The notes under the pieces: model-generated | Database searches by the model: none | Seen by the model: the letters and a program-made list of their open reading frames with translations, nothing else | What the model was told of the DNA's origin: nothing | Shown: positions 3,570 to 35,672 of the stretch, in pieces | Position numbering within the stretch: position 1 is the first letter of the stretch | Layout of the letters: the number at the start of each line of letters is the position of its first letter | Virus record (IMG/VR): IMGVR_UViG_3300019458_000021 | Span: 173,380 to 237,379 of that record | DNA: 64,000 bases | Direction: 5' to 3' (one strand) | Position numbers and translations under genes: made by a program

Positions 3570-3971
3570 ATGAACATGGCAGAGAAAAAAGAAAAGAAAC
3601 TCACAGTCAAAGAGTTCAAATACTGGCTTGAAGGTGTCGAAGAAATGCAAGATGAAGGCTGGTATCCCGATCCGCGCCAATGGAAACGCATTCGCGAAAA
3701 GATAGGACTGCTTGACGAGGCCGCCTCAATGATGACTGAAGTTCAGGCTGCTGGACTTACGTCAATTGCCCCTGGTATAATGGCATTTCCTCCAAATGTG
3801 AATCCAAACAATCCGTTGGAACGAATGAACATTGATCCAGCTAACTTTCCACAACCGACTGCTCGTCCACCAGGCAATGGCCCGTTCTTAAACGATGACA
3901 CATCCAAACCAGCCAAGACCCCAAACATCGACACCGGACCGGGTAAGCCTTACGCAAGCTCATTTACATAG
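3570..3971 (+). CDS. Hypothetical protein with Pro-rich C-terminus
   Basis: 133-aa ORF after TAAATA at 3540. Confidence 0.7.
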   Translation: MNMAEKKEKKLTVKEFKYWLEGVEEMQDEGWYPDPRQWKRIREKIGLLDEAASMMTEVQAAGLTSIAPGIMAFPPNVNPNNPLERMNIDPANFPQPTARPPGNGPFLNDDTSKPAKTPNIDTGPGKPYASSFT

Positions 3972-4494
3972 TACAACGCTGAAAGACCGCACCCTTTGGT
4001 TTGATGGTGATTCGTCGTTCAACTCAGATACGTTGTACGACGCCGTTCAGAAGTATGACGTAAAGTTTGTCGATTGGATCTCACCTCTCGTTGCCCAATA
4101 CAATCGTCAAGTTCAGACCGATCAAGAACTCACTGTCAAAACACGATGCAAGCCTTTAACGTTTGACTGGACGATTCCTGAGAAGTACGCTAAACTTGAC
4201 ATTGTGCAGCATATCGCCGACAAGCATTGGGCTGTCTTGCGGACGTGCCCGGAACAGGAGTGGGAAGATCGCGAACTTCGCCTCGTTTCAGAGCTACGGA
4301 ACTATCAGAAGCGGAATTTGTACGGCGTTTTACGCGTAATCATTTTCGTCATAAATACCTTAACCGACAATGATATAGTGTGGGGTGTCGGCCGTGGCAG
4401 CAGCGTGTCGTCTTATGTCTTGTATGTGATAGGTGTTCACGACGTGGATAGCTTTGCATATGATCTCGACGTCGACGACTTCCTGCACGATTAG
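3895..4494 (+). CDS. DNA polymerase III alpha (DnaE)-like N-terminal fragment
   Basis: RL..EL, then IVWGVGRGSSVSSYVLYVIGVHDVD (GRGS motif). The ORF ends before the catalytic DxD. Start codon uncertain. Confidence 0.8.
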   Translation: MTHPNQPRPQTSTPDRVSLTQAHLHSTTLKDRTLWFDGDSSFNSDTLYDAVQKYDVKFVDWISPLVAQYNRQVQTDQELTVKTRCKPLTFDWTIPEKYAKLDIVQHIADKHWAVLRTCPEQEWEDRELRLVSELRNYQKRNLYGVLRVIIFVINTLTDNDIVWGVGRGSSVSSYVLYVIGVHDVDSFAYDLDVDDFLHD

Positions 4495-4503
4495 GAGAGG
4501 GTT

Positions 4504-4764
4504 ATGCGAAAAGGAGTGCGTAGTGCGCGCGGCGTTGAAGTCAACTTCGACCTGCTCAAAATCAAACAACAGATTGCTTCTGCTCCGAAAACAACGGAAG
4601 TGAAAGCGCGCGAGAGCTTTATTGATCAGAAGTTCAAGCGCCGGCTTAAGAGGGTACAGGCACAAGTGACGGATAATACAATTCCGCCACCAGGACCACA
4701 AGTATTTCCTGAAGTCGTCGTCGAGAAAAAGTTACCGGAGTCAGACGAACCAAAAGAACAATAA
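4504..4764 (+). CDS. Hypothetical protein
   Basis: 86-aa ORF with a GGAG RBS. Confidence 0.7.
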   Translation: MRKGVRSARGVEVNFDLLKIKQQIASAPKTTEVKARESFIDQKFKRRLKRVQAQVTDNTIPPPGPQVFPEVVVEKKLPESDEPKEQ

Positions 4765-4779
4765 TACGGAGTGCATATT

Positions 4780-5373
4780 ATGAAACTTAGACCCATACAA
4801 AACCATATCATCTTTCGCTTTCTTGAAACCGTTGATTCAAAAGGATATTTCACTAAAAAGCTCGACTGGGGATTTGAAGTACAAGGACATGCTGACGATA
4901 GTGCAAAATCTCCTCGTTGGGTGAAAGTCCTTGATGTAGGACCAGATTGTAAAGGCGTAAAGCCAGGTGATGATATTCTTGTTAAGCCATTGATGTGGTC
5001 GTTGCGATTCAAGGTCGACGGCGAACAACTATGGCGAACCGATGAAAGCAAGATCATTGCCGCAGATACGATAACAACGGACGAAGCAGGAAACATCAAA
5101 CACGACTTTCGTGCTTTCGGTAAGAGTGTAATTTTCCATCGCATGGACGTTCAGAAAAACGTCACCGAATCTGGTCTCCATGTCGAAGGCAAAATAAACG
5201 ATGATACGGCATACGGACAAGTTGTTGACCTTGGCCCGGATGCGGTTTCCGAGCTCAAAAACGCAAAAGTATACTTCCTGGACCAGAACTTCTTTGGTTA
5301 CTTCGAGTACAGAGGCGTTAAGTTCTGCTATATCGAAGAAAACGAGATTCTGGCATACGAACCTAAGGAGTAA
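4780..5373 (+). CDS. GroES-like co-chaperonin with two tandem domains
   Basis: MKLRPIQNHI...VLDVGPD...VKPGDDILV...DESKIIA, then a second copy TESGLHV...GQVVDLGPD...IEENEILA. Confidence 0.75.
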   Translation: MKLRPIQNHIIFRFLETVDSKGYFTKKLDWGFEVQGHADDSAKSPRWVKVLDVGPDCKGVKPGDDILVKPLMWSLRFKVDGEQLWRTDESKIIAADTITTDEAGNIKHDFRAFGKSVIFHRMDVQKNVTESGLHVEGKINDDTAYGQVVDLGPDAVSELKNAKVYFLDQNFFGYFEYRGVKFCYIEENEILAYEPKE

Positions 5374-5375
5374 CA

Positions 5376-6584
5376 ATGCTGTTCATTGCCATGTTGATTG
5401 CTACAACAATAGCAATCGCAGGATCTGCTGCTTACTTTAGCGTGTATGGTCTTGCGTATACGTTCAGTGGGATGTTCTGGTATGTTGTTGTTATGGGAGC
5501 ATCTCTTGAAGCTGGTAAACTGATGTCCGCTTCGTATCTTTACCGATACTGGTCAAAGATGGGTGGGTGGACGTGGCTTCGATACTACATGATTGCTGGT
5601 ATTCTGGCGTTGATGTTTCTGACGTCTGCTGGCATTTTCGGCTTCTTGTCATCTGGTTATCAGGCAGATGTCCTTCCGTTGAAACAGAAAGAAGCACAAG
5701 TCAAGCTTCTTGAGGACGAAAAGGTCCGTAAGCTTGCTCGGAAACAACAAATAGACGACCTGATCGCCCGATCTCCAATAGTGCAAAATCTTGAGCGTAA
5801 CGGCGAGATCGACCGTCGCGCAATGCTTGTGTTGCGCGAAAGCACACGCGCACGAGACAGTTTGACCCGACAGTATAAGGCAGAACAGACCGAAGTCACG
5901 AAGCGACTGAATGAACTCGACAAAGAGATCCTTGCGCTTCAACAAGAAATCATCAAGACAGAAGCACATATTGGTCCGATTACCTACATCGCGAAGGCGT
6001 TTGGTTATGAAACGGATCAAGCAACAAAGTACCTGATCTTCATAATCATCTTTGCGTTCGACCCAATGGCAATCGCTTTGACGCTCGGCGTGAACATCGC
6101 TTTGCGAGTCCGTAATAACGAACGGCGACCAATGCCAGAGATCAAACCTCGCGAATCGATGCTGCCTGAACCAAAACACACACCACCAATGCCAGAGATC
6201 AAACAGCATCCAAAGCAGGAGATTGACCCTCGTGAATTCATTGGAGAACTGTTGCCCGAACCAAAACACACACCACCAATGCCAGAGATCGAACAGCCTC
6301 ACGCTGTTCGAGCAGAAATTCTTCCGGTAAAGATTCCAATTTCAGAGCCTGTTGTTGAGAAAAAACCTGAACAGCCTGTTGAAAAACGCATTCGTCCACG
6401 ATACATTGACGAACTGGCCGCAAGTAGTGGTGCGATCAACCCCGATGCGCTATACGAATTGATCAGCTACTATCGTGAACTAAAGGCGAAGCCTCATCCT
6501 TTAACGGGTCAAGACCTTGTTGACAAGCACGCAATCGAGAACATTCTTCGTAGTCATGGATTGATGTTATACTTCAACGAGTAG
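5376..6584 (+). CDS. Membrane protein with coiled coil and Pro-rich repeats
   Basis: Three N-terminal hydrophobic helices, a coiled coil, a further TM segment (IIFAFDPMAI) and PEPKHTPPMPEI twice. Confidence 0.75.
   Translation: MLFIAMLIATTIAIAGSAAYFSVYGLAYTFSGMFWYVVVMGASLEAGKLMSASYLYRYWSKMGGWTWLRYYMIAGILALMFLTSAGIFGFLSSGYQADVLPLKQKEAQVKLLEDEKVRKLARKQQIDDLIARSPIVQNLERNGEIDRRAMLVLRESTRARDSLTRQYKAEQTEVTKRLNELDKEILALQQEIIKTEAHIGPITYIAKAFGYETDQATKYLIFIIIFAFDPMAIALTLGVNIALRVRNNERRPMPEIKPRESMLPEPKHTPPMPEIKQHPKQEIDPREFIGELLPEPKHTPPMPEIEQPHAVRAEILPVKIPISEPVVEKKPEQPVEKRIRPRYIDELAASSGAINPDALYELISYYRELKAKPHPLTGQDLVDKHAIENILRSHGLMLYFNE
6128..6290 (+). repeat. In-frame coding repeats (CCAATGCCAGAGATC x3; ~37-bp unit x2)
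   Basis: gaaccaaaacacacaccaccaatgccagagatc at ~6168 and ~6258. Confidence 0.85.
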
Positions 6585-6612
6585 TTGATTTGTTCCTTGT
6601 AGTCGGTATAAT
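6585..6612 (+). promoter_or_regulatory. sigma70-like promoter for the clamp-loader operon
   Basis: TTGATT-N16-TATAAT, followed by an AGGAG RBS. Confidence 0.5.
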
Positions 6613-6636
6613 AGTACGATACCAAGGAGCATCCTA

Positions 6637-7566
6637 ATGCAAGATAAGCATAAGCTTTGGGTCGAAAAATACAGACCCTCTGCAATAGAAGACTACATTT
6701 TTCACGACGGACATCAACGGGCCTCATTCGAGGTGATGATTGCAAATAAAACGATCCCACACCTACTTTTGTCTGGTGTTCAAGGATCTGGTAAGACAAC
6801 AATCGCTCGAATCCTTATCAGTGCAATGGAACTTGACAACAGTGATGTGCTGAAGATCAACGCTTCACGAGAAAACACCGTTGAAGTGGTTCGTGAGAAG
6901 ATTCAAAGCTTCGTTTCCACGTTCGCAATGAGTGACTTCAAGGTTGTGTACCTCGAAGAAGCGGACTACATCACGTTGAACGGTCAAGCCGTAATGCGCA
7001 ATATCATGGAACAGTATTCGAATCACGTCCGGTTCCTACTAACTTGTAACTACGCCCATCGAATCATGCCCGCTATCGTGTCGCGATGCCAACACTTCCA
7101 TTTCAAAGCTCCGCCAAAAGCAGAAGTAGCAAGCTACTGCTATGAAATTCTTGGCCGGGAACGAATCAACTTCTCCGATGCGACGTTGATCAAATACATA
7201 ACGCACGGCTATCCGGACATTCGCAAGATCGTCAATTCGTTACAACAGAATTCGAGTACTGGTGAGCTTCTTGATCCAAAGCTAGAAGGCGCTGCCGGTG
7301 ATTGGAAGTTCCAACTGATCGACATGATTGAACAGAATAAGTGGAATGAAGCTAGGAAACTGGTGTGTGCGAGTGTTGATGGAGAAGAGTGGGTCGAATT
7401 GTACAGATTCCTCTACGAGAATCTACGTCGAGGCCTCAAGTTTCAAGACACTGCAAAGTGGGAGGAAGGAATTCTCACGATTGCAAAACATCTATACCAG
7501 CATGGTGTTGTTGCTGATCCCGAGATCAATGCAGCTGCCATGTTTATCAGCTTAGGACAACTATAA
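6637..7566 (+). CDS. Clamp loader ATPase subunit (gp44/RFC-like)
   Basis: WVEKYRP, GVQGSGKTT, INAS, EEAD, SRC and YPDIRK motifs. Confidence 0.92.
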   Translation: MQDKHKLWVEKYRPSAIEDYIFHDGHQRASFEVMIANKTIPHLLLSGVQGSGKTTIARILISAMELDNSDVLKINASRENTVEVVREKIQSFVSTFAMSDFKVVYLEEADYITLNGQAVMRNIMEQYSNHVRFLLTCNYAHRIMPAIVSRCQHFHFKAPPKAEVASYCYEILGRERINFSDATLIKYITHGYPDIRKIVNSLQQNSSTGELLDPKLEGAAGDWKFQLIDMIEQNKWNEARKLVCASVDGEEWVELYRFLYENLRRGLKFQDTAKWEEGILTIAKHLYQHGVVADPEINAAAMFISLGQL

Positions 7567-7931
7567 TGGCTCGTAGAAAGAAACCAGACGCAGAGACGCC
7601 TGAACAGGCGAGACAACGAAGAATTTTCGAGACGATTTGTGACCATGCAACGCGTGGTGAAAAGGTATCGTGGAATCGATTGATGGACAACATGGTGTCT
7701 TTGCTTGCAAAGTTAAAACCGATTGAAGACAAAATCGTCGCGCTGCAGTCACAGAAACTTCCGATCATTGACGAAGTTGCGAATCTTCGCCGACGAATGG
7801 TAATGGACTGTGTTCATCCGTATGAACAACTAGTGCTTACTGCTGAACACGTTGAGTGCAAATTCTGCATGAGGCGCTTTCGCGTGCCAAATATGCACGA
7901 CGATAGCGTGTTGAGTCAGGATTCCCAATGA
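7566..7931 (+). CDS. Hypothetical protein with C-terminal CxH/CxxC
   Basis: 121-aa ORF overlapping both neighbours. Confidence 0.7.
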   Translation: MARRKKPDAETPEQARQRRIFETICDHATRGEKVSWNRLMDNMVSLLAKLKPIEDKIVALQSQKLPIIDEVANLRRRMVMDCVHPYEQLVLTAEHVECKFCMRRFRVPNMHDDSVLSQDSQ

Positions 7932-8860: not shown

Positions 8861-9303
8861 ACCTATTCGAACTGCTAGGAGCTATTAGTGAGAAAAACAC
8901 TGGCTACTATCAAAATCTGACAGATGAAGAACTGAAAGAGCTTCAACCGTTTGTCATCATGCGATGGCTAACGGGAACGTCAAGCAAACGACAAGTGTAC
9001 CTTTTGAATGCTGTTGTAAATCCATTCGTGTTCGATCTTGGACAGCATAAACAGTTGTTGTTCTATCTTCTGACGTTGTGTACTCAGCACGCGCAACGAT
9101 ACAACTGGATCAAACCACCCAGCTCAAAACGGCTGGGCAAATTAGCGGTGACGGTCCTGTGTGATTACTTCAAGTACACAAAACGACAAGCAATTGATGC
9201 TGCGAAACTTTTGCAATCAGAAGACATTCTGGACTATGCCGAACAATTAGGTTGGCAAAAAGAAGAGATCGCTAAGCTGAAAAAAGAGCTAAAAGGCGAC
9301 TGA
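8842..9303 (+). CDS. Clamp loader small subunit (gp62-like)
   Basis: LFELL.AI, PFVIMRWL, R..WIK, Y......A pattern; near the gp44-like gene. Confidence 0.6.
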   Translation: MADRKLNLFELLGAISEKNTGYYQNLTDEELKELQPFVIMRWLTGTSSKRQVYLLNAVVNPFVFDLGQHKQLLFYLLTLCTQHAQRYNWIKPPSSKRLGKLAVTVLCDYFKYTKRQAIDAAKLLQSEDILDYAEQLGWQKEEIAKLKKELKGD

Positions 9304-10016: not shown

Positions 10017-10024
10017 CTCTTCCA

Positions 10025-10030
10025 TAAATA
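10025..10030 (+). promoter_or_regulatory. Putative T4-like late promoter (TAAATA)
   Basis: Upstream of the virion gene at 10064; the same motif recurs before other late genes. Confidence 0.6.
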
Positions 10031-11302: not shown

Positions 11303-11304
11303 AG

Positions 11305-24422: not shown

Positions 24423-26708
24423 ATGGCTGATTACATCATTAACTTCACCGACCCTATGAATGGTTCGTTCCTCATCAAACCGATGACGACGAACGGACCA
24501 GCGTCTCCGGCAGCAGTTACACCCCTCGACCCACAAGCGACTTCAGCAAATACATCGATTGTTCTACTCGGTAAAGGGATGTTTGAATATGGCGAACGTG
24601 TGGCAGAATCGTTCGTTCATATGTTGGAACATTTCGCGTTTCCGACGCCCCCAGCATATCCGATTCAGGGTCAAATTTGGTTTGATAATGGAACTCCTGG
24701 TCTGTTCGTCTATGACGGTGCAGTATGGAATCCAATTCTTGTTGGCAGTTTTCCGATTGCCGGCGATCTTGATATGGGTGGATTCAAGATCGAGAATCTT
24801 GGCGATCCTGATAGCGCCGACGATGCCGTTAACTTAGGATTTGCTGACACTCGATACGTGAACGTAACTGGTGATACAATGACAGGTACGTTGACTGTGT
24901 CGTCAGCAGACATCGTTTTGACAGGAGCAGGTTCGCAAATCACATTACCAAACGCACCTGTTGCTGCTACCGATGGTGTTAATAAAGCGTTTGTTGATGC
25001 ATTGACTTTGGACAGTTTGGTAGATGTTATCATCACGGTTCCTGTTCTTAACCAATTGTTGCGTTATAACGGTGTAAACTGGGTCAACGCAACAGTTCTC
25101 ATTCCAAGTGTTCTTGATGATCTGTCTGATGTTGCGATCACCGCTCCTGTTGTTGGTGATGTTCTGACATTCGACGGCTTGGTGTGGATTAACCAAGCGC
25201 CAGCTGCGTTTACAGATCGATATGTAACGGCTGGTGCAATGATCGGAACAACTCTGCAATTGTCGTTCTCAACAGCTGTCCCTTCACCAACGATCAACAT
25301 TGCTGGCATTGCGCCGGACGGTCATACTCATCTTGCACCACAGGTGCTGTACAACACGAATCAGCCAGACCCAACATGGGTCGGTCCACCACCAACATAT
25401 CCGTATCCGTTCTACAACGACAGCTACCTACGCGAATTGCTCATCACGACCGCAACGGGCTATCCAAATCCACAATTTCCGTATGGCCTCAACTTGCAGA
25501 CAATCATCAACACAACCGACCAGGCTCTATATCAGCTTGTGGATATTGATCGACAGGAAATTCTGCAGGGGGATGGCGCAACATCGCTGTTTACGATGCG
25601 GGGCCAGTATTTGGTCGGTCGTAACAAAGTTAAGATTTTCAACAACGGCGTCAAACAATACGCAAGCCAGCGCGCTGTTCTCAACGTGGAGTTCGAAACA
25701 CAAGTAGCACCAATTCAATCAATTAACGTTGGATCTGATACTGGTCTTGCCGACGGTACGTATTCATTTGATATCATCGTCAATGGTACATTGTTCACAG
25801 GTGTTACTGCACCAACTGTTACTGTTGCAGAGGACAGGGACGTTACGGCAGTTGATGGAACAGGAGGACCGTTAGGTCCTCTCACCACGACCGGAACAAC
25901 TTGGACGATTACCGATCCACTCGGCGATTTCGCTGACACACTTGGAATAGGTACAATTTTCACTGTGACGGGAGCTGGTCCGGGTAGCGGCACCTACGTT
26001 GTTTTGACAGCAACGTGGGATGGAATTGGCGAGACAGACATCGTCATTGATCCGTCGGGTCTTGGAGTACCTGGCATGTTTACAACTATTCCAATTGGCA
26101 CAACGGTCACGCTCGGTGTCACTACACTACGCAAACCATACTACTTCCAACAACTAAAAGAAGATCTCGATGTTAGCTTTGTGGCCAATGCGATTCCGGC
26201 GATTGTGTCATTTTACAACAGCACTCTATCGTTCGAATCAGAAGTTGTTGGAACCGGCTCGACTGTGTTTTATGTGCCCGTGGCGAATGACTTGTTTGAC
26301 GAAATGCTAACAGCCGGTGTTGTAACTCCAGACTTTGTTTACTCGGGTAGTATGGTGAGTATTGACGCAGCTGACAACACTGTCAGCCCAGACGAGTTCC
26401 AAGTAATTGGTGATTACACTGGTGCCTTTCCAACTGGTGTTCGCTTCATTGTGTTCGGTTCTATAGGCAATGACGATGAATACGTCACAGTAGCCAACGC
26501 AACTTTTGCTGCCGGTTTTACAACAATCTATGTGACCAACGGAGCGATTTCTGTCAACGAAGCAAGCGGCGCCGGTACGGGAGATATTTTCTTTGAGCGC
26601 ACACTTGCATATGACGAAGTTGGTACACCGAATAACAATTCCGATCAAATTCAGTTCACTGTTGCACCAGCCACCGGTGATCTAATCGAAGTATTGATTG
26701 CACCATAA
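24423..26708 (+). CDS. Virion / tail-fibre protein
   Basis: N-domain paralogous to 10064; LDDLSDV repeats; ADTRYVNVTGDTMTG; TAAATA at 24395. Confidence 0.75.
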   Translation: MADYIINFTDPMNGSFLIKPMTTNGPASPAAVTPLDPQATSANTSIVLLGKGMFEYGERVAESFVHMLEHFAFPTPPAYPIQGQIWFDNGTPGLFVYDGAVWNPILVGSFPIAGDLDMGGFKIENLGDPDSADDAVNLGFADTRYVNVTGDTMTGTLTVSSADIVLTGAGSQITLPNAPVAATDGVNKAFVDALTLDSLVDVIITVPVLNQLLRYNGVNWVNATVLIPSVLDDLSDVAITAPVVGDVLTFDGLVWINQAPAAFTDRYVTAGAMIGTTLQLSFSTAVPSPTINIAGIAPDGHTHLAPQVLYNTNQPDPTWVGPPPTYPYPFYNDSYLRELLITTATGYPNPQFPYGLNLQTIINTTDQALYQLVDIDRQEILQGDGATSLFTMRGQYLVGRNKVKIFNNGVKQYASQRAVLNVEFETQVAPIQSINVGSDTGLADGTYSFDIIVNGTLFTGVTAPTVTVAEDRDVTAVDGTGGPLGPLTTTGTTWTITDPLGDFADTLGIGTIFTVTGAGPGSGTYVVLTATWDGIGETDIVIDPSGLGVPGMFTTIPIGTTVTLGVTTLRKPYYFQQLKEDLDVSFVANAIPAIVSFYNSTLSFESEVVGTGSTVFYVPVANDLFDEMLTAGVVTPDFVYSGSMVSIDAADNTVSPDEFQVIGDYTGAFPTGVRFIVFGSIGNDDEYVTVANATFAAGFTTIYVTNGAISVNEASGAGTGDIFFERTLAYDEVGTPNNNSDQIQFTVAPATGDLIEVLIAP

Positions 26709-26717
26709 GGATAGGTC

Positions 26718-29700
26718 ATGACATCATCATTTGACATCATCAAAGCGGACGGTTCAACATTCACGATCTACGCGTTAGAAGGCGACGGCTCGAGCAATCT
26801 TTCACTCCCACGACAAGTACTCAGTGCGGTGCTGTCTGGTGGCGCAGGTGTAAACTACTTTGAACTTGGTGATGATCTCACGTACCGATTTGTACCAGGG
26901 TTCACCTTCAACGTTATCATTCTTGATCCACTGTCCTTCCCACCGACCGCAAACGAAGGAACGTATACGGTCGTAACATCATCATATGTTGGGAACGTTA
27001 CACGAGTTACAGTTGCTCAAACGATTCCTCGCGGATTCTTTACAATCAACGGAGTGACAATCGGTTCCCAAACATGGCGAATCAGTGGTAATCATGCTGC
27101 TGAATTTGGCGCTGGTACAAGTATCATTGTCACAAACAACTCTGGTAATGGGAACAGTGTATATACTGTTGTATCGGCAACGGTTGTTGGTCCGAATACT
27201 GAAATCGTAGTATTGCAAACAATTCCTGGTGCTTCAGCTGGTGTTGCCGTCGTACAATTTTTTGCGGCTCCTGTTTTCACACCTGCCACAACACTCGGAA
27301 TTACTGCTGGTTTGTATGATATCCGTCTTGCTATCGACGGTGGTGCTTCCTCGATATATACAGTGACCGCCACGGGCACTGACACTATGGCGTCAATGGC
27401 TGCTCTTCTAACAACAATAACAGGTCTGACTGTTACTGTTGCAAATAATTACTTCACATTTACAAGCGGTACAACAGGTACTGGTTCGTCTGTTGCTGTC
27501 GTAACACCAACTGCTGGCATAAATCCGGACTTATTCGCTGCTATTGATATAGCAAAAACAGCAACACATACGTCCATTAGTACACAAGGCCGCGCTGCAT
27601 CATCTGGTGATGGTTTACTAACTGTTAACTCCTACGACATTGTTGGCGTTGTTCCAGGTGTTGGAGGCACTTGGACTATAGCCGGCAACACCGCATCACG
27701 ATTCCCGATTGGCTCTGGATTTGCCGTTTCTGGCAACTCTGCAGGGGATGGTAACTATTCTGTGGCATCAGCAACCAACGTTGGCGCAGACACGGATATT
27801 GTTGTCACGGCAACTATTCCATTGTTGTCCGACACGACAGGTGCAGTTCTTGTTGGAAACATTCCACTTGGTCATATTCAATATCACTTGACCGTTGCCG
27901 ATGCTGGCATCAACACGTCGTTCGACCTGCTTGGTAAAGGAATGCCAAACTGGGGCGCAACATTCCAAGGTGACATTGTTCGAGCTCTTGAAAACCATGC
28001 CGCTTCAACGCCACCTGCAGCACCTATGTCTGGTCAATTATGGTATGACACTGGCGCAGCAACCTTGAATCTGTTTGCATCAACGATCTATGATATTGTT
28101 GCCGTCGACACCGTAGGTCCTGTATATGTGTGGACAATTTCTGGTAACCATGCTGCTACTTTCTCGACACTTAACGCTCGATTTGCAGTGTTTGGTAACA
28201 CTGGTATCAATGAAGCAAACATCGCCGTTCCGGGCACATATTCCGCTTCGTCGGTGTATCAGATTTTGTCTGCTGTAAACGTTGGTCCAAACACAGAAAT
28301 TACAATCAATACAACTGTATCTCCTCCTCTTTCAAACTCGATCCCAAGCGATGCAACCGGTGACGGTAAGTTATATTTGATGAGTGATTGGCACGAAATT
28401 GCGTTGACGGAGAATGTTCTAACGTTAGATTGGAAAAATTCTGTCCGCGCAGCAACAACAGCAGCACTGCCAGCAGTGACATACAACAACGGACTTTCAG
28501 GTGTTGGTGCAACACTTACAGCAACCGCTAACGGTGCTCTCCCCGCACAGGACGGTGTTTCTCTTGCTTTGAACGAACGATTGTTGGTTAAGAATCAAGC
28601 AAGTGGACTGCAAAATGGTATCTATACCGTAACACAACTCGGCGATGGCGGCAATCCTTTCATTCTCACACGAGCTGTAGATGCTGATACAAATGCTGAT
28701 GTAACAGCTGGAATGGCGATGGTTATTGAAGAGGGAGCAACATATAATGATGCAGCTTTCTTCTTGGGAACAAACAATCCAATCACCGTCGGCACAACCG
28801 CATTGATGTTTGTTCAGTTGACAGCATCAATTGCTGCGCCAGTCAATGAGATTGTTTACGGCACTGGCGTCGGTGTGACATCTGAGGCAGATTTCACGTG
28901 GGATCCGACGACAGACACCTTGATGCTTGGAGGTGTTGGTGATTTAGGCACAATTACTAACGGTGATGGTGGAACAATTGAATTCGACGCTGGCGTGATT
29001 CGCCTAACGGGCGACAACGGCGATTTCATCGAAATTGGCGCAAGTATCAATCTTACCGGTGTTGCAGGCACAACCGGTTCAACAATCACAATTGCAGCCG
29101 GAGATTCGTCCGTTGCTGCTGGCGGAACAGTTGCCATTGTTGGTGGTGATGCAACACTTGTTGCAGGTGGTCCTGTAACGATTACAGGTGGTACTGGTGG
29201 TACAAGTCTTGGTACCGGCACTGGTGGTGCTGTATCGATTACTGGTGGTACAGCAGGCGCTAACTTGACAAATGGTGGTGCTGTCAATATCCGAGGTGGT
29301 TCAGGTGGTGTAGTTGGCGTTAGTGGTGGTGGTGCTGTTAACATCACTGCGGGTGATGGTGTCGGAGCAACCGGAGGCGGCGGTGGTTCTGTCGTACTTA
29401 CTGGTGGTACGCCAACCATTCTTGGTATTGGAGGTGGCGTTTTAATTCAAGGAGCACAAGGTCTTGGCCTTGGAAATGGCAGCGGTGGTGTTGTACTTGT
29501 TGGTGCTAATGGTGCTGTAGCAGGCGGTAACGGTGGCTCTATTTCGATTACAGCTGGCACAGCAACAAGTGTATTCACAGCCGGAACTCTCTCTTTGACA
29601 GCAGGCGGTGGGGGAACAACAACGGTCGGTGGTGCAGTAACAATCACTGGTGGTCCAGGCGGTACAGTGTCAGGCACTGGCGGTGCAGTAACAATCACTG

Positions 29701-31052
29701 GTGGTATACCAACAAGTGGTGCCGGTGGTGCGGTAACACTACAAGGTGCTAACTCAGCAACTGGTTTCCAAGGAGGCAATGCAACACTGCAAGGTGGACG
29801 AGGTGGTTCAACCAATACCGGTGGAAACGCTGTAATCACAGGCGGCCTTGGTGGTACGACAAGTGGTGCAGGTGGCAACGTTCTCATCACTGGTGGTACA
29901 CCAACAAGTGGTGCAGGTGGCCTTGTCGTCATAGCAGCCGGTAACGCAACTGGTTCAGCAACTGGTGGAGATGCTTCGCTAGCGGGTGGTACAGGTGGTA
30001 CAACCGGCACTGCCGGAACTGTAACAATCATTGGCGGTGCAGGTGGATCAACTTCAGGCAACGGTGGTAGTGCTACTCTTCGTGGTGGATCTCCGAGCAA
30101 CGGTAACGGTGGTAGTGTTATTATTCTTGGTGCAACAGCAGCGGGAACTGGTGCTGGAGGCGATGTATCGATTACAGGTGGCAACGCATCGACAACCGGC
30201 GAAGGTGGTGACATCACACTCACAGCGGGCAACGGTGCTACATCAAGAGGTGGCATTGTTACTCTCAACGGTGGTACAAATCCATTTGCTGGCACCGTCA
30301 ATGCCATCTCAATCAACGGAGGATCAGCAACAAATGCTGGTTCTCTTGGAAACGCTGTTCAAATCAACGGTGGCTCACATACAACCAATCAAGGTGGTAC
30401 GGTAAGCCTTACTGGTGGCACAGGTGGTACATCTGGAACAGGTGGAACCGTAAGTTTGACAGGTGGTACACCTGGTTCAACGTCAACAGGTGGTGCGATA
30501 TCGATTGCTGGCGGTCCTGGTGGATCGACATCCGGTGCAGGTGGATCAATTACACTTATAGGTGGTATTCCGACTGATGGAAACGGCGGAAGTATCACAA
30601 TCACTGGTCGAAATGCCGTTGGTACAAACCGTGACGGTGGTAACGTCACACTTACACCTGGCACTGCAACAGGCTCAGGAACAGCTGGTAGAGTGATTAT
30701 CAATGGTCCTGCTAAGCTTGGACCATTTGCTGAAACGTTTGCAAGTCCATCAATTTCTGCTGGTACGTTGACATTGGATCTCACCACAGCAAATACGTTT
30801 AGTGTGTCACTGAACCAAAACATTACCACACTCAATATCAACAATCCACAAGCATCAAGTGCACATGGCTTTTCAATCATCTTCACAGCTGACGGAACAT
30901 TGCGAACAATTACATGGCCGGGTAGTGTCAAGTGGGCAGGAGGTACTGCACCAACTATGACTGCGACAGCAGGAAAGGTTGATATTTTGACATTCTTTAC
31001 GGTTGATGGTGGAACTAACTGGTACGGTGTGGTCTCCGGTCAAAACTTTTAA
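26718..31052 (+). CDS. Large Gly-rich tail fibre / adhesin (1444 aa)
   Basis: WKNSVRAATT...LLVKNQ...QNGIY tail domain, long GG(A/N)VTITGG repeats, C-terminal WPGSVKWAGGTAP domain. Confidence 0.8.
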   Translation: MTSSFDIIKADGSTFTIYALEGDGSSNLSLPRQVLSAVLSGGAGVNYFELGDDLTYRFVPGFTFNVIILDPLSFPPTANEGTYTVVTSSYVGNVTRVTVAQTIPRGFFTINGVTIGSQTWRISGNHAAEFGAGTSIIVTNNSGNGNSVYTVVSATVVGPNTEIVVLQTIPGASAGVAVVQFFAAPVFTPATTLGITAGLYDIRLAIDGGASSIYTVTATGTDTMASMAALLTTITGLTVTVANNYFTFTSGTTGTGSSVAVVTPTAGINPDLFAAIDIAKTATHTSISTQGRAASSGDGLLTVNSYDIVGVVPGVGGTWTIAGNTASRFPIGSGFAVSGNSAGDGNYSVASATNVGADTDIVVTATIPLLSDTTGAVLVGNIPLGHIQYHLTVADAGINTSFDLLGKGMPNWGATFQGDIVRALENHAASTPPAAPMSGQLWYDTGAATLNLFASTIYDIVAVDTVGPVYVWTISGNHAATFSTLNARFAVFGNTGINEANIAVPGTYSASSVYQILSAVNVGPNTEITINTTVSPPLSNSIPSDATGDGKLYLMSDWHEIALTENVLTLDWKNSVRAATTAALPAVTYNNGLSGVGATLTATANGALPAQDGVSLALNERLLVKNQASGLQNGIYTVTQLGDGGNPFILTRAVDADTNADVTAGMAMVIEEGATYNDAAFFLGTNNPITVGTTALMFVQLTASIAAPVNEIVYGTGVGVTSEADFTWDPTTDTLMLGGVGDLGTITNGDGGTIEFDAGVIRLTGDNGDFIEIGASINLTGVAGTTGSTITIAAGDSSVAAGGTVAIVGGDATLVAGGPVTITGGTGGTSLGTGTGGAVSITGGTAGANLTNGGAVNIRGGSGGVVGVSGGGAVNITAGDGVGATGGGGGSVVLTGGTPTILGIGGGVLIQGAQGLGLGNGSGGVVLVGANGAVAGGNGGSISITAGTATSVFTAGTLSLTAGGGGTTTVGGAVTITGGPGGTVSGTGGAVTITGGIPTSGAGGAVTLQGANSATGFQGGNATLQGGRGGSTNTGGNAVITGGLGGTTSGAGGNVLITGGTPTSGAGGLVVIAAGNATGSATGGDASLAGGTGGTTGTAGTVTIIGGAGGSTSGNGGSATLRGGSPSNGNGGSVIILGATAAGTGAGGDVSITGGNASTTGEGGDITLTAGNGATSRGGIVTLNGGTNPFAGTVNAISINGGSATNAGSLGNAVQINGGSHTTNQGGTVSLTGGTGGTSGTGGTVSLTGGTPGSTSTGGAISIAGGPGGSTSGAGGSITLIGGIPTDGNGGSITITGRNAVGTNRDGGNVTLTPGTATGSGTAGRVIINGPAKLGPFAETFASPSISAGTLTLDLTTANTFSVSLNQNITTLNINNPQASSAHGFSIIFTADGTLRTITWPGSVKWAGGTAPTMTATAGKVDILTFFTVDGGTNWYGVVSGQNF

Positions 31053-31061
31053 TGGTGTAGC

Positions 31062-33287
31062 ATGACAATTGCTCGGTCATTCTTCAGGCAGGCTACAGGA
31101 AATTTACAGGGAGCAATGTTGTTTGGCTGGGGAAATGCTACCACAGCAGAAACAGGCACTGGTCTGGGATCAATCACAGGCATATTTGGTCAGTGGGCAA
31201 TGGCACCAATTTTTCCAATTGATAATCTTAGTTGGAACACATTGAGTGTCGGTGCTGCACACACCCTTGGAATTAAATCAGACGGCACGTTGTGGGCGTG
31301 GGGTGAAAATACAAACGGAGCACTTGGTGATGGAACTATAACATCAAGATCGTCCCCTGTGCAAATTGGAACGTCAAGTTGGTTATCTGTTAGTGCTGGT
31401 AATGCTAATAGTTTCGGTATTCGTCTTGACGGTGCATTATTCGCCTGGGGGACAAACACAAGTGGTCATCTAGGTACCGGCAACACAACAAACTTTTCAT
31501 CGCCAGTGCAAATTGGAACATCAAGTTGGTCAATGGTTAGTTCTGGTGAACTTTGGACTGCTGCACTTCGCAGTGATGGAGTTTTGTTTACCTGGGGCAA
31601 CGCTGGAGACGGTAAACTCGGTGACGGAACAATCACTAGTAAATCATCGCCCGTTCAAATCGGTGCATCAGTCTGGACGTCAGTTAGTGCTGGTTCACAC
31701 CACGGTGCATCTATTCGCTCAGATGGAGCTTTATTCACATGGGGTCGAGGCGTAAACGGACAACTAGGTGACGGAACGTCGGTTAGTAAGTCATCGCCAG
31801 TGCAAATCGGAACATCAAGTTGGAGCATAGTAGACGCTGGTCAAGATCACACAATGGGCATTAAAATAGATGCAACGCTTTGGGCTTGGGGTGCAGGCAC
31901 AAACGGAAAACTTGGTGATGGAACAACCGTTTCTAAATCTTCCCCTGTTCAAATTGGTACGTCTAGTTGGAATGCTGTTGCGGCTGGTCGTGAATTCACT
32001 TTCGCTATACGGTTAGATGGTATGCTGTTTTCTTGGGGTGAAAACGATAGTGGTTTGCCTGGACAACTTGCGAATTTGACATTCACAAACACTTCCTCCC
32101 CTGTTCAAGTTGCTTCAACAGCTAGTTGGACAATGGTGTCGACTGCTAGAACGACAAATGGAAACTCAGGCATGACTGGTGGAAAACGAACTAACGGTCA
32201 AATTTACATTTTTGGTAACGGTCCTGGTGGTGAGGAATTCGGATTCACCTATTGGGTCCCTGCTACTATTAGTCAAACACTGCCGTATCCATCCGCCTAT
32301 GCTGAACATCCAACATCTAGTGCACAAGCACGAAGCTGGAGTGTGATCAGCTCCGGTGACAACTGGAGTGTTGGCATTCGTTCTGATGGTAGTCTTTGGT
32401 CGTGGGGGACAAACACTAACGGGCAACTTGGAAATGGAACAACCGCTGCTACGTGGCCGCCTACACAAATCGGTGCGTCTAGTTGGACTGCTATAGCGGC
32501 TGGACCGAGTCATGTAGTTGCCATTCGTTCGGATGGTGGATTGTTTACCTGGGGTGCTAACGGTCAGGGACAACTTGGTGATGGATCAACAACAGCAAGA
32601 TCCTCACCAGCTCAAGTTGGTACTGAGAGTTGGGTTGTTGTTACTGCTGGAGGACATGGAACATTCGGTCATTTCTCTGGTGGCATAAGGATTGGTGGAG
32701 CCTTGTTTATGTGGGGCAGAAACAGCGAAGGTGCACTTGGTGATGGCACAACAACAAACAAATCGTCACCTGTGCAAATTGGAACATCGAGTTGGAATGC
32801 TGTTGCTACTGGTGATTTCCACACGGTTGCAATTCGATCAGGCGGCTCACTATTTGCATGGGGATTTAACGGCAGTGGACAAGTTGGTGATGGATCAACA
32901 ACAAACAGATCATCTCCTGTGCAAATTGGAACATCGAGTTGGAATGCTGTTGCAGCAGGCGAATCATTTACTGCTGCAATCCGAAACGGAGGTAATATTT
33001 TCACATGGGGCAACGGTGGAAATGGTCGTCTTGGTGATGGAACTATCGTTTCCAAGTCATCACCTGTGCAGATCGGAACCTCGGTGTGGACACAGATTAC
33101 GACCGGTTTCGCATATGTGCTTGCTATACGAAGCGACAACGCTCTCTTTGCATGGGGCAACAACGCAAGCGGACAACTTGGTGATGGAACGGTCACAAGC
33201 AGATCGTCCCCTGTACAGATTGGTTCTTCCTACCAATGGTCAAGAATTTCCGGTGGTATTGATAGTTCGCTTGCCGTTGCAACTTAA
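31062..33287 (+). CDS. RCC1/BLIP-II repeat beta-propeller protein
   Basis: About 14 repeats of W..V.AG..H...IRSDG.L..WG.N..GQLGDGT....SSPVQIG. Confidence 0.92.
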   Translation: MTIARSFFRQATGNLQGAMLFGWGNATTAETGTGLGSITGIFGQWAMAPIFPIDNLSWNTLSVGAAHTLGIKSDGTLWAWGENTNGALGDGTITSRSSPVQIGTSSWLSVSAGNANSFGIRLDGALFAWGTNTSGHLGTGNTTNFSSPVQIGTSSWSMVSSGELWTAALRSDGVLFTWGNAGDGKLGDGTITSKSSPVQIGASVWTSVSAGSHHGASIRSDGALFTWGRGVNGQLGDGTSVSKSSPVQIGTSSWSIVDAGQDHTMGIKIDATLWAWGAGTNGKLGDGTTVSKSSPVQIGTSSWNAVAAGREFTFAIRLDGMLFSWGENDSGLPGQLANLTFTNTSSPVQVASTASWTMVSTARTTNGNSGMTGGKRTNGQIYIFGNGPGGEEFGFTYWVPATISQTLPYPSAYAEHPTSSAQARSWSVISSGDNWSVGIRSDGSLWSWGTNTNGQLGNGTTAATWPPTQIGASSWTAIAAGPSHVVAIRSDGGLFTWGANGQGQLGDGSTTARSSPAQVGTESWVVVTAGGHGTFGHFSGGIRIGGALFMWGRNSEGALGDGTTTNKSSPVQIGTSSWNAVATGDFHTVAIRSGGSLFAWGFNGSGQVGDGSTTNRSSPVQIGTSSWNAVAAGESFTAAIRNGGNIFTWGNGGNGRLGDGTIVSKSSPVQIGTSVWTQITTGFAYVLAIRSDNALFAWGNNASGQLGDGTVTSRSSPVQIGSSYQWSRISGGIDSSLAVAT

Positions 33288-33301
33288 ATTGTGTAGGCTG
33301 T

Positions 33302-34372
33302 TTGAAAAACAACTACAACCCTATGCACCCCATTGACAAACAACTTGATCACATGCTTCACGGACGTTTTGGACGTGGATGGCAAATTTCAGAAAACCTC
33401 GACAAAACAATGCCCGATGATGCACGACATCTGTTTAATCGAGGTTGGTTCCTACTCAATCAAGGGAAATTTCAAGAAGGCTATCAGACTCTCGAAGCTG
33501 GTCGCTTTTTGAATGTCTACGGTTCTGGACATATAGGCACACAAAAACCAATCTGGAATCCTGCAGAAATGTCCCTCGCAGGGAAACGTGTGATTCTGGC
33601 TCTCGAGGGCGGCTATGGTGATGAGTTAATCAATATTCGATTTGCAACACCACTTGCGGAGCGAGGTGCAACTGTTATAGTTCGTGCAAGTGAAGCGGTC
33701 CATTGTTTGATTAAACGTGTCAAGGGCGTTTCGGAAATTATTACACCTTATCAAGTTCGAGATGTTCATCACGATTGTTGGATTCCTGGATTCAGTGCTG
33801 CTTGGTTGCTCGGTTACGATTACTCAACCTTGATCAATGCTCCGTACCTTACACCACATCCTCAATCGGTTGAAATTTGGAAGAACGTGATTAAAACCGA
33901 TAAACTCAAAGTTGGCATTCGATGGAGCGGAAATCCAAAGTTTGAACATCAGCAATTCCGTCGGTTTCCTGTTGAACCTCTACTTGCATTGTCTGCATAC
34001 CAAAACGCACAGTTATACAGTCTTCAACGTGATAATGACTTGTTGGACCTTCCGAACAACATTGTCGATTTGCAACACTTGTTAATATCGTGGGAAGACA
34101 CAACTGCTGCAATTGCGAATATGGATTTGGTGATCTCCTCGTGCACAGCAGTCGCTCATCTTGCGGCAGCAATGGGTAAACCAACATGGGTTCTTGTTCC
34201 AATTCTACCGTATCACATCTGGACATATAAAGCACCAGAATCACGTTCTTCTCCATGGTATGGAGACAACGTTCGGCTTTTCCGACAAGCAAAGTATGAG
34301 TCGTGGGAAAAGCCGTTTAAGATGCTACACAAGCAGTTTGGCCAATGGATAAATACGACGAAATCCTCATAG
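33302..34372 (+). CDS. TPR-like/GT9-type glycosyltransferase
   Basis: EGGYGD...IRF, KVGIRWSG, YSLQ, DTTAAIANMDLVISSCTAVAHLAAAMGKPTW. Confidence 0.8.
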   Translation: MKNNYNPMHPIDKQLDHMLHGRFGRGWQISENLDKTMPDDARHLFNRGWFLLNQGKFQEGYQTLEAGRFLNVYGSGHIGTQKPIWNPAEMSLAGKRVILALEGGYGDELINIRFATPLAERGATVIVRASEAVHCLIKRVKGVSEIITPYQVRDVHHDCWIPGFSAAWLLGYDYSTLINAPYLTPHPQSVEIWKNVIKTDKLKVGIRWSGNPKFEHQQFRRFPVEPLLALSAYQNAQLYSLQRDNDLLDLPNNIVDLQHLLISWEDTTAAIANMDLVISSCTAVAHLAAAMGKPTWVLVPILPYHIWTYKAPESRSSPWYGDNVRLFRQAKYESWEKPFKMLHKQFGQWINTTKSS

Positions 34373-34382
34373 GCTGACCATT

Positions 34383-35066
34383 ATGCAACCACCAATTTCA
34401 TTAGCACAAATCGACGTTGATCCACTTCGTGTAGGACAAACCCACACTGTTGAAGCTCAAACCAAAACAAACACATTCCAAGAAGTGTTTATCAACGGTC
34501 AAAGTTTTGAGATCGACTCTGCGGAGAATACAACAAATCCTGACAGATTCACCATTGCTGATGATTTCACAGACATCTTCACGACAGGCACAACGTTCTT
34601 TGTTAGCGGATCCGCCGGCAACGATGGTACGTATACCGTTGTTGAAAATGCAACGTTTGCGGCTGGGTTTACAACAATCTACGTAACAAATGGGTCGATT
34701 ACTACAAATGAAGGCGCTGGCCTCGGCACGGGATTCATCAATACAGGAGAACGGTTGGTCCTTCCGAACAACTCTGCAACACTTATTAACGTCTTCTTAG
34801 TGGGCCGTGACACAGTAGCCTCGCCAGGCGAAGGCGCTGGTTTCATTACGCGGTCGGCGTTCGTTCGTGATGCAACAGCCGCATCCGTTGTACGTATTGG
34901 AGGCCTCGTTGACAGCTTTTCAAGAGAGAACATGGCTGGAACACCAGATGTCGACCTGACAGCAGATACGACCAACGGCTCGATTAAACTCGAAATCAAA
35001 GGATCCACCTCTGGTAATGTGGTTGTATGGAGTGGTGTTGTTCTCTTGCAACAGATTGAAACGTAA
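34383..35066 (+). CDS. Virion protein sharing a domain with 24423
   Basis: NATFAAGFTTIYVTNG is identical in both proteins; TAAATA at 34350. Confidence 0.7.
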   Translation: MQPPISLAQIDVDPLRVGQTHTVEAQTKTNTFQEVFINGQSFEIDSAENTTNPDRFTIADDFTDIFTTGTTFFVSGSAGNDGTYTVVENATFAAGFTTIYVTNGSITTNEGAGLGTGFINTGERLVLPNNSATLINVFLVGRDTVASPGEGAGFITRSAFVRDATAASVVRIGGLVDSFSRENMAGTPDVDLTADTTNGSIKLEIKGSTSGNVVVWSGVVLLQQIET

Positions 35067-35081
35067 TGGTACAATGTCCTA

Positions 35082-35672
35082 ATGGCTGACATTGATATTG
35101 ACTTTCGTACCGACTTTGATCCAAAGCGCGTCTTCAAACAGATCATTCCTGCTTCGATCATCAAGAACGATGATCTCGAGAAGCACAACTGTGGACACTA
35201 TTTTCAAACGATTCCTGTTGATCCTGTCACAGGGTTAGCAGCTATTCCTTATGAAGAAGCAGAGGTCTTGGGATACTTTAAGATTGACTTCTTACATCTG
35301 GCTGTGTTAGACAACTTCACAAGCAAAGACGAAATTCGAAAGCTGATTCGTCAATCACCTGATTGGACCCTTTTATTACACGAGGAACACGTTTCAAAAC
35401 TCTTCCAAGTCCATAAACGAGCCGACTTGTTGAAACGAATTCGGCCAAATTCAGTTCAGGAATTGGCCGATTGCATTGCATTGATTAGACCATCAAAGAA
35501 ATATCTCATAAATAGATATGTAACAGAGATTAACAATAGAGAAACAATACAAAGAGAATTATACGAAAAACCAACAGAGGGTGGTAGTAAATGGTTTAAA
35601 AAAGCTCATGCGATCAGTTACGCGTTGACAATAGTGCTTCAGTTACACCTTATCCAACAAGGAAAGTTGTAG
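35082..35672 (+). CDS. Miniature DnaE-like catalytic fragment
   Basis: DIDIDF, KHNCG, GYFKIDFL, ALIRP and FKKAHAISYA, in DnaE order within 196 aa. Confidence 0.85.
   Translation: MADIDIDFRTDFDPKRVFKQIIPASIIKNDDLEKHNCGHYFQTIPVDPVTGLAAIPYEEAEVLGYFKIDFLHLAVLDNFTSKDEIRKLIRQSPDWTLLLHEEHVSKLFQVHKRADLLKRIRPNSVQELADCIALIRPSKKYLINRYVTEINNRETIQRELYEKPTEGGSKWFKKAHAISYALTIVLQLHLIQQGKL

What the first reader, a model, noticed from the sequence alone, without database searches (positions are those of the whole stretch)
3895..35672. Split, miniaturised DnaE-like polymerase in two genes ~30 kb apart
Seen: 3895-4494 carries the GRGS region and stops. 35082-35672 begins at DIDIDF and compresses KHxxG, KIDFL, RP and FxKAHAxSYA into 196 aa. 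Neither piece shows intein motifs at the break, and no PHP or OB domain is evident. Known: bacterial DnaE exceeds 1000 aa with these motifs in this order. Inferred: a two-subunit minimal C-family nucleotidyltransferase with all three catalytic Asp, perhaps for priming or repair rather than processive replication.
Basis: partly seen in the sequence, partly recalled or inferred. Interest (0 to 1): 0.75.

Follow-up and report, generated by a model that had tools for sequence, protein, structure and literature searches.

The report
Split mini Pol III alpha polymerase
Two small, well-conserved phage genes 31 kb apart encode the two halves of a stripped-down DnaE-type DNA polymerase core. The halves are predicted to join into one enzyme, but this arrangement was already described for this group of giant phages in 2021 and its activity has never been tested.

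Summary
ORF 3895-4494 (199 aa) matches the first half of the DnaE palm (E. coli Pol III alpha 277-394, including GRGS). ORF 35082-35672 (196 aa) matches E. coli 399-783, compressed into 196 residues, and starts with DIDID (D401/D403/D405). It also keeps K-x-D (K553/D555), RP, and KxH...Y with the steric-gate His760. Thumb, PHP, HhH/beta-binding and OB parts are absent, and there is no room for an intein at the break. Both proteins belong to large families of uniformly short proteins whose break point is fixed. They co-occur, one copy each, in complete relatives alongside a family B polymerase, which this contig also has. The pair is predicted to form a complex (ipSAE 0.89 against a best control of 0.00).

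The best reading is a heterodimeric minimal C-family DNA polymerase that works alongside PolB. Its role is unknown; gap filling, primer extension or repair are guesses.

This is not new. Iyer et al. 2021 (Viruses 13:63) described exactly this split minimal Pol III alpha in group 2.2 jumbo phages, and PHROGs and RefSeq already label both halves "DNA polymerase". The window's copy comes from an uncultivated phage assembled from cave metagenomes. Interest is low to moderate, because no biochemistry exists for the family.

The parts
3895..4494 (+). Gene for the N subunit (199 aa) of the split minimal Pol III alpha. It supplies the first half of the palm, with the GS (NTP-binding) loop.
   Evidence: PF07733 E 2.3e-9 and phrog_11127 E 1.2e-36. 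hhalign to E. coli DnaE 276-395, probability 95.9. VIA-align Z 13.8 to 4jom 277-394. AF2 mean pLDDT 91.9.
3955..4167 (+). Family-specific N-terminal domain of the N subunit (about residues 21-91) with invariant D37-G38. It has no counterpart in DnaE and is predicted to touch the C subunit.
   Evidence: Invariant columns in 74-76 sequences. Not covered by any DnaE superposition. Interface residues 27-40, 54-55 and 86-94. The atlas search gave nothing informative.
4390..4401 (+). GRGS motif (residues 166-169), matching E. coli G361-S364, the GS loop of the Pol-beta-like palm.
   Evidence: Invariant in the family; positions.
35082..35672 (+). Gene for the C subunit (196 aa). It supplies the second half of the palm, with the catalytic Asp triad, plus a shortened fingers domain.
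   Evidence: PF17657 E 3.9e-5, phrog_11778 E 1e-65, phrog_405 E 2e-9. VIA-align Z 11.0 to 3e0d 461-840 and Z 10.4 to 2hnh 399-783. AF2 mean pLDDT 93.8.
35088..35102 (+). DIDID (D3, D5, D7), matching E. coli D401, D403, D405. These are two catalytic Asp plus the DnaE-type third Asp.
   Evidence: Invariant in 42-55 sequences; positions. The meaning of D401/D403/D405 is taken from PMC3919608.
35181..35195 (+). KHNCG, matching E. coli K510-H511-A-G-G514. It lies 31 residues after DIDID, against 109 in E. coli, so the thumb is missing.
   Evidence: H35 and G38 are invariant; spacing.
35280..35294 (+). KIDFL (K67, D69), matching E. coli K553 and D555, the third catalytic Asp.
35484..35495 (+). IRPS (R136, P137), matching E. 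coli F638-R639-P640 in the fingers.
   Evidence: Invariant; aligned.
35598..35624 (+). KKAHAISYA (K173, H176, Y180), matching E. coli N757-K758-S-H760...Y764. This is the helix that carries the steric-gate histidine.
   Evidence: H176 and Y180 are invariant. The role of H760 is taken from PMC8485763.
3570..3971 (+). Conserved upstream ORF (133 aa) whose 3' end overlaps the N-subunit start by 77 nt. This is context, and the two genes may be translationally coupled.
   Evidence: Homologous to XacN1 ORF246, E 2e-11. Upstream genes also overlap the N-piece start in XacN1, GAP32, Atu_ph07 and PA5oct.
4504..4764 (+). Small conserved ORF (86 aa) directly downstream of the N subunit. Context only; function unknown.
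   Evidence: Similar to XacN1 ORF244 (E 6e-10). A related set sits in the same position in GAP32, Atu_ph07 and PA5oct.
6637..7566 (+). Clamp-loader (gp44-like) gene. Its position a few genes downstream of the N subunit is conserved across relatives.
   Evidence: phrog_168 E 3e-72. The same order is seen in XacN1, GAP32 and Atu_ph07.

Best explanation
The two genes encode the two halves of one minimal C-family (DnaE-type) polymerase core, which assembles without covalent joining.

The N subunit supplies the helical half of the Pol-beta-like palm with the GRGS loop; in this fold that loop holds the nucleotide triphosphate. It also has a family-specific N-terminal domain of about 70 residues that is predicted to pack against the partner.

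The C subunit supplies the beta-strands with the metal-binding Asp residues (D3/D5/D7 and D69), plus K67. It also supplies a shortened fingers domain with the RP motif and the helix that carries the steric-gate histidine H176.

Together they would form a composite active site that adds dNTPs to a primer.

The pair lacks the thumb, PHP, HhH/clamp-binding and OB parts, and the phage has its own family B replicase. The enzyme is therefore most likely a distributive accessory DNA polymerase working beside PolB, for example in gap filling, short primer extension or repair.

Shown here: homology, motif retention, a fixed break point, co-occurrence, and a predicted complex. Inferred: catalytic activity, dNTP preference, and the in vivo role.
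For: - Homology and fold.
- Catalytic and substrate residues are invariant across divergent homologues. In the N family these are G166 R167 G168 S169; in the C family D3 D5 D7 H35 G38 K67 D69 R136 P137 H176 Y180.
- The families are large and uniformly short. The N family has 906 representatives at 50% identity with E<=1e-3. The C family has 845 proteins.
- The break point is fixed. The stop falls 33-41 residues after GRGS in 72 loci, and DxDxD lies 1-42 residues after the upstream stop in 79 of 80 loci. None of these N or C loci from IMG/VR holds the other piece within the 1 kb fetched on each side.
- Co-occurrence: 5 of 5 complete, divergent phages carry exactly one N piece, a C piece and PolB. 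Of large contigs picked by the N piece, 12 of 16 hold the C piece, including 4 of 4 that are at least 90% complete. Of contigs picked by the C piece, 8 of 9 hold the N piece.
- Predicted complex: ipSAE 0.89 against a best control of 0.00. That mark was reached by 58 of 80 solved complexes and 2 of 110 mismatched pairs. The interface joins the GRGS loop (N 159-172) to the DIDID strand (C 1-9), residues 63-68 next to K67/D69, and residues 173-176 on the steric-gate helix.
- Both genes sit in replication neighbourhoods. The N piece lies between a helicase and the clamp loader. In GAP32, PA5oct, Atu_ph07 and Slicko01 the C piece lies just upstream of primase and the DnaB-like helicase.
- The contig has its own PolB.
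- Iyer et al. 2021 reached the same reading independently.
Against: - No biochemical or genetic data exist for any member.
- The enzyme lacks the thumb and the HhH, OB and clamp-binding elements that hold DNA in every studied C-family polymerase, so templated synthesis is not assured.
- The complex prediction may partly reflect the model's memory of the intact DnaE fold, and it used my own alignments.
- In this window the C piece follows tail-fibre genes rather than primase, so the replication context of that half is not universal.
- No DnaQ-like proofreader was found in the 68%-complete contig.
Confidence: 0.65

Rival explanations
1. The heterodimer is an active nucleotidyltransferase but not a templated DNA polymerase. 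It could be, for example, a terminal transferase on DNA ends or a maker of some nucleotide product.
For: The thumb, HhH, OB and clamp-binding parts that grip primer-template DNA are all missing. The Pol-beta-like palm is shared with many non-polymerase transferases (general knowledge).
Against: The fingers motifs that face the incoming dNTP in DnaE are invariant, namely RP and KxH...Y with the steric-gate His. The genes sit among replisome genes in most relatives.
Confidence: 0.12
2. The two proteins act separately, for example as mimics or modulators of the host Pol III, and do not form one enzyme.
For: They are encoded far apart (31 kb here, up to more than 100 kb elsewhere) and were never found fused.
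Against: Neither half has a complete active site on its own. They co-occur one-to-one. Together they cover a continuous stretch of the DnaE core, 277-394 plus 399-783. The complex is predicted with high confidence.
Confidence: 0.05
3. The ORFs are decaying remnants of a once full-length phage dnaE gene.
For: Earlier genome papers called the N piece a 'truncated' DnaE (CBB_328, 172 aa).
Against: There are hundreds of intact homologues of constant length with invariant catalytic residues and a fixed break point. The predicted folds are confident.
Confidence: 0.02
4. The halves are joined after translation by a split intein, as in cyanobacterial DnaE.
For: A naturally split dnaE with distant halves is known in cyanobacteria (general knowledge).
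Against: The N piece ends at the equivalent of E. coli residue 394 and the C piece starts at 399, so there is no space for intein halves. The family alignments show no extra terminal segments.
Confidence: 0.01

Closest known systems
Split minimal DNA polymerase III alpha of group 2.2 jumbo phages (Iyer, Anantharaman, Krishnan, Burroughs, Aravind 2021, Viruses 13:63; PHROG families 11127 and 11778)
   Same: Two stand-alone proteins of about 170-200 aa from distant genes. The N half binds NTP; the C half binds metal and template. No other Pol III domains are present, and a family B polymerase is encoded in the same genome.
   Different: Nothing essential differs. This copy is from an uncultivated cave-metagenome phage and is 50-69% identical to its nearest relatives. 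Details added here:
- retention of D405 and the steric-gate His;
- the fixed break point;
- the N-terminal add-on domain;
- presence in a 141-kb phage;
- the predicted complex.
Bacterial Pol III alpha (DnaE1, e.g. E. coli, 1160 aa; PDB 2hnh, 5fkv, 3e0d)
   Same: Pol-beta-like palm with GRGS, the D401/D403/D405/D555 equivalents, K553, the RP motif and the steric-gate His760, all in the same order.
   Different: It is split into two chains at residues 394/399. It lacks PHP (1-270), the thumb (about 78 residues missing between DxD and KH) and about 81 residues of the fingers. Everything after about residue 783 is absent, including HhH, the clamp-binding motif, OB and the tau-binding domain.
Cyanobacterial dnaE split by a natural split intein
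   Same: A C-family polymerase encoded by two distant genes (general knowledge).
   Different: No intein halves are present here, the break is at a different place, and the halves stay separate chains.
Two-gene family B polymerases of some T4-like phages
   Same: A phage polymerase encoded as separate polypeptides that must assemble. PolB is itself in 2-3 frames in Atu_ph07, PA5oct and Slicko01.
   Different: A different polymerase family, and those pieces are adjacent genes. That they assemble is recalled from the literature and was not tested here.

Membership tests
C-family DNA polymerase catalytic core (Pol III alpha / DnaE) | Pol-beta-like palm with the GS (GRGS) nucleotide-binding loop | tested here: met
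   GRGS at N 166-169 is invariant. N residues 91-199 superpose on E. coli 277-394, Z up to 13.8.
C-family DNA polymerase catalytic core (Pol III alpha / DnaE) | Three catalytic Asp (E. coli D401, D403, D555) | tested here: met
   C residues D3, D5 and D69 are invariant in 42-55 sequences. The definition is from PMC3919608.
C-family DNA polymerase catalytic core (Pol III alpha / DnaE) | DnaE-type extra Asp (E. coli D405; Asn in PolC) | tested here: met
   C residue D7 is invariant.
C-family DNA polymerase catalytic core (Pol III alpha / DnaE) | Steric-gate histidine in the fingers (E. coli H760) | tested here: met
   C residue H176, in KKAHAISYA, is invariant.
C-family DNA polymerase catalytic core (Pol III alpha / DnaE) | PHP domain at the N terminus | tested here: not met
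   PF02811 is absent from this contig and from five complete relatives, while all 14 control genomes were positive.
C-family DNA polymerase catalytic core (Pol III alpha / DnaE) | Thumb domain between DxD and the KHxxG strand | tested here: not met
   31 residues separate DIDID and KH here, against 109 in E. coli.
C-family DNA polymerase catalytic core (Pol III alpha / DnaE) | (HhH)2, clamp-binding motif and OB domain | tested here: not met
   The C piece ends at the equivalent of E. coli residue 783. The full-length DnaE profile phrog_405 finds only the two pieces in five complete genomes.
C-family DNA polymerase catalytic core (Pol III alpha / DnaE) | Template-directed DNA synthesis | not testable with these tools
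   No biochemical report was found.
Split minimal Pol III alpha of group 2.2 jumbo phages (Iyer et al. 2021) | Two separate short proteins, split between the NTP-binding and metal-binding halves | tested here: met
   199 aa and 196 aa. The break is at E. coli 394/399. phrog_11127 E 1.2e-36 and phrog_11778 E 1e-65.
Split minimal Pol III alpha of group 2.2 jumbo phages (Iyer et al. 2021) | Genes distant from each other in the genome | tested here: met
   31 kb apart here. In relatives the distance ranges from about 0.8 kb to more than 100 kb.
Split minimal Pol III alpha of group 2.2 jumbo phages (Iyer et al. 2021) | Accompanied by a family B DNA polymerase and T4-like replication genes | tested here: met
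   PolB at G000:C1:69230-70432, E 2.4e-40. Clamp loader and helicase are in the window.
Intein-split DnaE | Split-intein halves flanking the break | tested here: not met
   No unaligned terminal segments. The stop falls 33 residues after GRGS, and DIDID starts at residue 3.

The most novel reading that the evidence does not exclude
The heterodimer of about 45 kDa is a self-sufficient, template-directed DNA polymerase. That would make it the smallest C-family polymerase known, consisting of a palm and stub fingers only. It would take a defined share of fork synthesis beside PolB, for example extending primers made by the neighbouring primase before hand-off, as DnaE does for PolC in Bacillus. 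These phages would then run a two-polymerase replisome, and the enzyme would be a working model of an ancestral bacterial-type replicase core.
Probability: 0.2. Interest if true: 0.7.

Novelty: already known. Interest (0 to 1): 0.3.

Why it matters
If the pair is active, it defines the minimum a C-family polymerase needs. It would also be a tractable 45-kDa system for studying the bacterial-type replicase active site. And it would show that a very widespread group of large phages combines an archaeo-eukaryotic-type PolB with a bacterial-type polymerase core. Both families have at least 600 matching stretches in IMG/VR contigs, and the N family has about 900 clusters at 50% identity.

None of this is a new idea, since it was proposed in 2021. 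What is still missing is experiment, not recognition.

Tried and rejected
- Literature search for biochemical or genetic work on the split enzyme found only Iyer et al. 2021 and genome papers that call the N piece a truncated DnaE.
They were rebuilt without those rows.
- hhalign of the C family against a single E. coli sequence gave only 26% probability over residues 59-139. The structural superposition and the PHROG and Pfam hits carry that half instead.
- The atlas search with the N-terminal domain (residues 21-92) gave only scores below 0.85, which is uninformative.
- A DnaQ-like proofreader (PF00929) was not found in the 68%-complete contig. This says little, because relatives do encode one.
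- No RNA run holds the window, only DNA runs from cave metagenomes, so expression could not be checked.
- dN/dS was not attempted. The nearest distinct relatives are only 51-69% identical, so synonymous sites would be saturated; conservation of motifs and lengths was used instead.
- Methanobacterium virus PhiF1, a weak hit to the C piece, has a full-length DnaE, not a mini form.
- A fused N+C form was looked for only in the fetched loci. A database-wide search for fusions was not possible within the tools' length limits.


Full report
**Where the window lies.** The window is the last 64 kb of a 237,379-bp IMG/VR viral contig that CheckV rates 68% complete. Contigs from two cave-metagenome DNA runs hold window 3400-5400 without a single difference. 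The gene content is that of the Rak2 / 121Q / GAP32 / XacN1 / Atu_ph07 group of very large myoviruses.

**Checking the observation.** ORF 3895-4494 (+, 199 aa) and ORF 35082-35672 (+, 196 aa) are both intact and end in TAG.

- The N piece passes Pfam's cut-off for DNA_pol3_alpha (E 2.3e-9). It matches phrog_11127, annotated "DNA polymerase", at E 1.2e-36.
- The C piece passes the cut-off for DNA_pol3_finger (E 3.9e-5). It matches phrog_11778 at E 1e-65 and a full-length phage DnaE profile at E 2e-9.

| Motif | This window | E. coli DnaE |
|---|---|---|
| GRGS | N 166 | 361 |
| DIDID / DFDVD | C 3 | 401 |
| KHNCG / KHAGG | C 34 | 510 |
| KIDFL / KFDFL | C 67 | 553 |
| IRPS / FRPGP | C 135 | 638 |
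| KKAHAISYA / NKSHSAAYA | C 173 | 757 |

**Structure.** AlphaFold2 models are confident: mean pLDDT 91.9 for the N piece and 93.8 for the C piece. Their only meaningful PDB matches are C-family polymerases.

- N residues 91-199 superpose on E. coli alpha 277-394 (Z 12.5-13.8, rmsd about 2.2 A).
- C residues 1-196 superpose on E. coli 399-783 (Z 10.4), on Taq 461-840 (Z 11.0) and on PolC 971-1297 (Z 10.1).
- The two chains therefore cover a continuous part of the DnaE core, with a break of four residues just before the metal-binding DxD strand. There is no room for intein halves.

**What is missing.**

- DIDID to KH spans 31 residues here against 109 in E. coli, so the thumb is absent.
- RP to KxH spans 38 residues against 119, so the fingers are shortened.
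- Nothing follows the equivalent of residue 783.
- PHP is absent from this contig and from five complete relatives. In those relatives a full-length DnaE profile finds only the two pieces.

**What is kept.** The following residues are invariant.

- N family (74-76 sequences, mean column identity 34%): D37, G38, E133, G166-R167-G168-S169, H182, D185 and F196.
- C family (42-55 sequences): D3, D5, D7, H35, G38, D47, K67, D69, R136, P137, K139, H176 and Y180.

According to Timinskas et al. (PMC3919608), D401, D403 and D555 are conserved throughout the C family, and D405 marks DnaE as opposed to PolC. All four are present here. According to Vaisman et al. (PMC8485763), H760 is the invariant steric gate against ribonucleotides. 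Its equivalent, H176, is invariant here. This argues for dNTP use, and so for DNA synthesis rather than RNA priming.

**Not decay, and not chance.**

- The N family has 906 representatives at 50% identity with E<=1e-3, and the best 150 are all 87-205 aa.
- The C family has 845 members, and those listed are about 190-209 aa.
- In 72 IMG/VR loci the N frame stops 33-41 residues after GRGS.
- In 79 of 80 loci DxDxD lies 1-42 residues after the upstream stop.
- None of these IMG/VR loci holds the other piece within the 1 kb fetched on each side, so no fused or directly adjacent form was seen.

**Co-occurrence.**

- Five complete and mutually distant phages each carry exactly one N piece, a C piece and PolB. 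They are XacN1, GAP32, PA5oct, Atu_ph07 and the 141-kb Alishewanella phage Slicko01.
- Of 16 large IMG/VR contigs picked by the N piece, 12 hold the C piece, including 4 of 4 that are at least 90% complete.
- Of 9 contigs picked by the C piece, 8 hold the N piece. The exception has its C piece at the very end of the contig.
- The distance between the genes runs from about 0.8 kb to more than 100 kb, and the gene order differs between clades.
- This contig also has a family B polymerase (E 2.4e-40).

**Assembly.** The complex prediction gave ipSAE 0.89 against a best control of 0.00. That mark was reached by 58 of 80 solved complexes and 2 of 110 mismatched pairs, and these counts hold only roughly because my own alignments were used. 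The interface joins the GRGS loop of N (159-172) to three parts of C: the DIDID strand (1-9), residues 63-68 next to K67/D69, and residues 173-176 on the steric-gate helix. That is what a composite active site would require. The family-specific N-terminal domain of N (residues 27-40, 54-55, 86-94) also touches C. One caveat applies: because the two chains are pieces of one known fold, the model may partly be recalling intact DnaE.

**Context.** The N gene lies downstream of a helicase gene (1400-2995). After the N gene come a small conserved ORF, a GroES/gp31-like gene, one further ORF (5376-6584) and the clamp loader (6637-7566). The run from N gene to clamp loader is also seen in XacN1, GAP32 and Atu_ph07, and PA5oct has a chaperonin gene in the same place. 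In GAP32, PA5oct, Atu_ph07 and Slicko01 the C gene lies about 1.5 kb upstream of primase and the DnaB-like helicase. In this window and in XacN1 it instead follows structural and tail-fibre genes.

**Start of the N gene.** The only start codon is the ATG at 3895, which overlaps the conserved upstream ORF by 77 nt. The first 20 residues are modelled with low confidence, and most homologues start near residue 20-27. The sequence there is confirmed by two assemblies.

**Interpretation.** The most likely reading is a heterodimeric minimal DnaE-type DNA polymerase that works beside PolB. It has no thumb, clamp-binding or DNA-gripping domains, so it is probably distributive. Gap filling, short primer extension or repair are reasonable roles, but they are guesses. 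The rival readings are weaker, for the reasons given in their entries: another kind of transferase, independent proteins, pseudogene remnants, and intein splicing.

**Novelty.** Iyer et al. [quoted passage not shown] Earlier genome papers had already noted the N piece as a truncated DnaE. I found no experimental follow-up.

Details added here:
- the DnaE-type D405 and the retained steric gate;
- the exact break point and its constancy;
- the extra N-terminal domain with its invariant D-G;
- presence of the pair in a 141-kb phage;
- the wide range of distances between the genes;
- the predicted complex.

Noticed in passing
window 3570-3971 (+): A conserved 133-aa ORF, homologous to XacN1 ORF246 (E 2e-11), overlaps the N-subunit ATG by 77 nt. 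Relatives also have an upstream gene overlapping the N-piece start, which suggests translational coupling. Its function is unknown and it has no Pfam or PHROG hit.
   Followed up: partly
window 4504-4764 (+): A small 86-aa ORF directly after the N subunit has a conserved N-terminal RGxxVDxxL-type motif. Related small ORFs hold the same position in XacN1, GAP32, Atu_ph07 and PA5oct. It could be an accessory factor or simply conserved gene order.
   Followed up: partly
window 4771-5373 (+): A 200-aa protein with two GroES/gp31-like halves. phrog_931 'head morphogenesis' hits residues 42-83, and phrog_3188 and Cpn10 hit 113-195. It looks like a tandem co-chaperonin.
   Followed up: no
window 36930-37568 (+): A phage-encoded Fe/Mn superoxide dismutase (Sod_Fe_N E 4.7e-22, Sod_Fe_C E 4.1e-35).
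   Followed up: no
window 24423-34372 (+): A run of tail-fibre-like genes (761 and 1444 aa), then a 741-aa RCC1-repeat protein, then a weakly glycosyltransferase-9-like protein, all just upstream of the C subunit.
   Followed up: no
relatives: Atu_ph07, PA5oct, Alishewanella phage Slicko01: In these phages the family B polymerase itself matches in two or three separate open frames. In PA5oct the last piece lies about 2.5 kb further on. Split polymerase genes therefore recur in this group.
   Followed up: no
window 60001-64000: G+C rises to 0.52-0.56 at the end of the contig, against about 0.45 elsewhere.
   Followed up: no
IMG/VR record G018 (locus L100), 389 kb: IMG/VR classes one large record that carries both pieces as a provirus. 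That would be unusual for this phage group.
   Followed up: no
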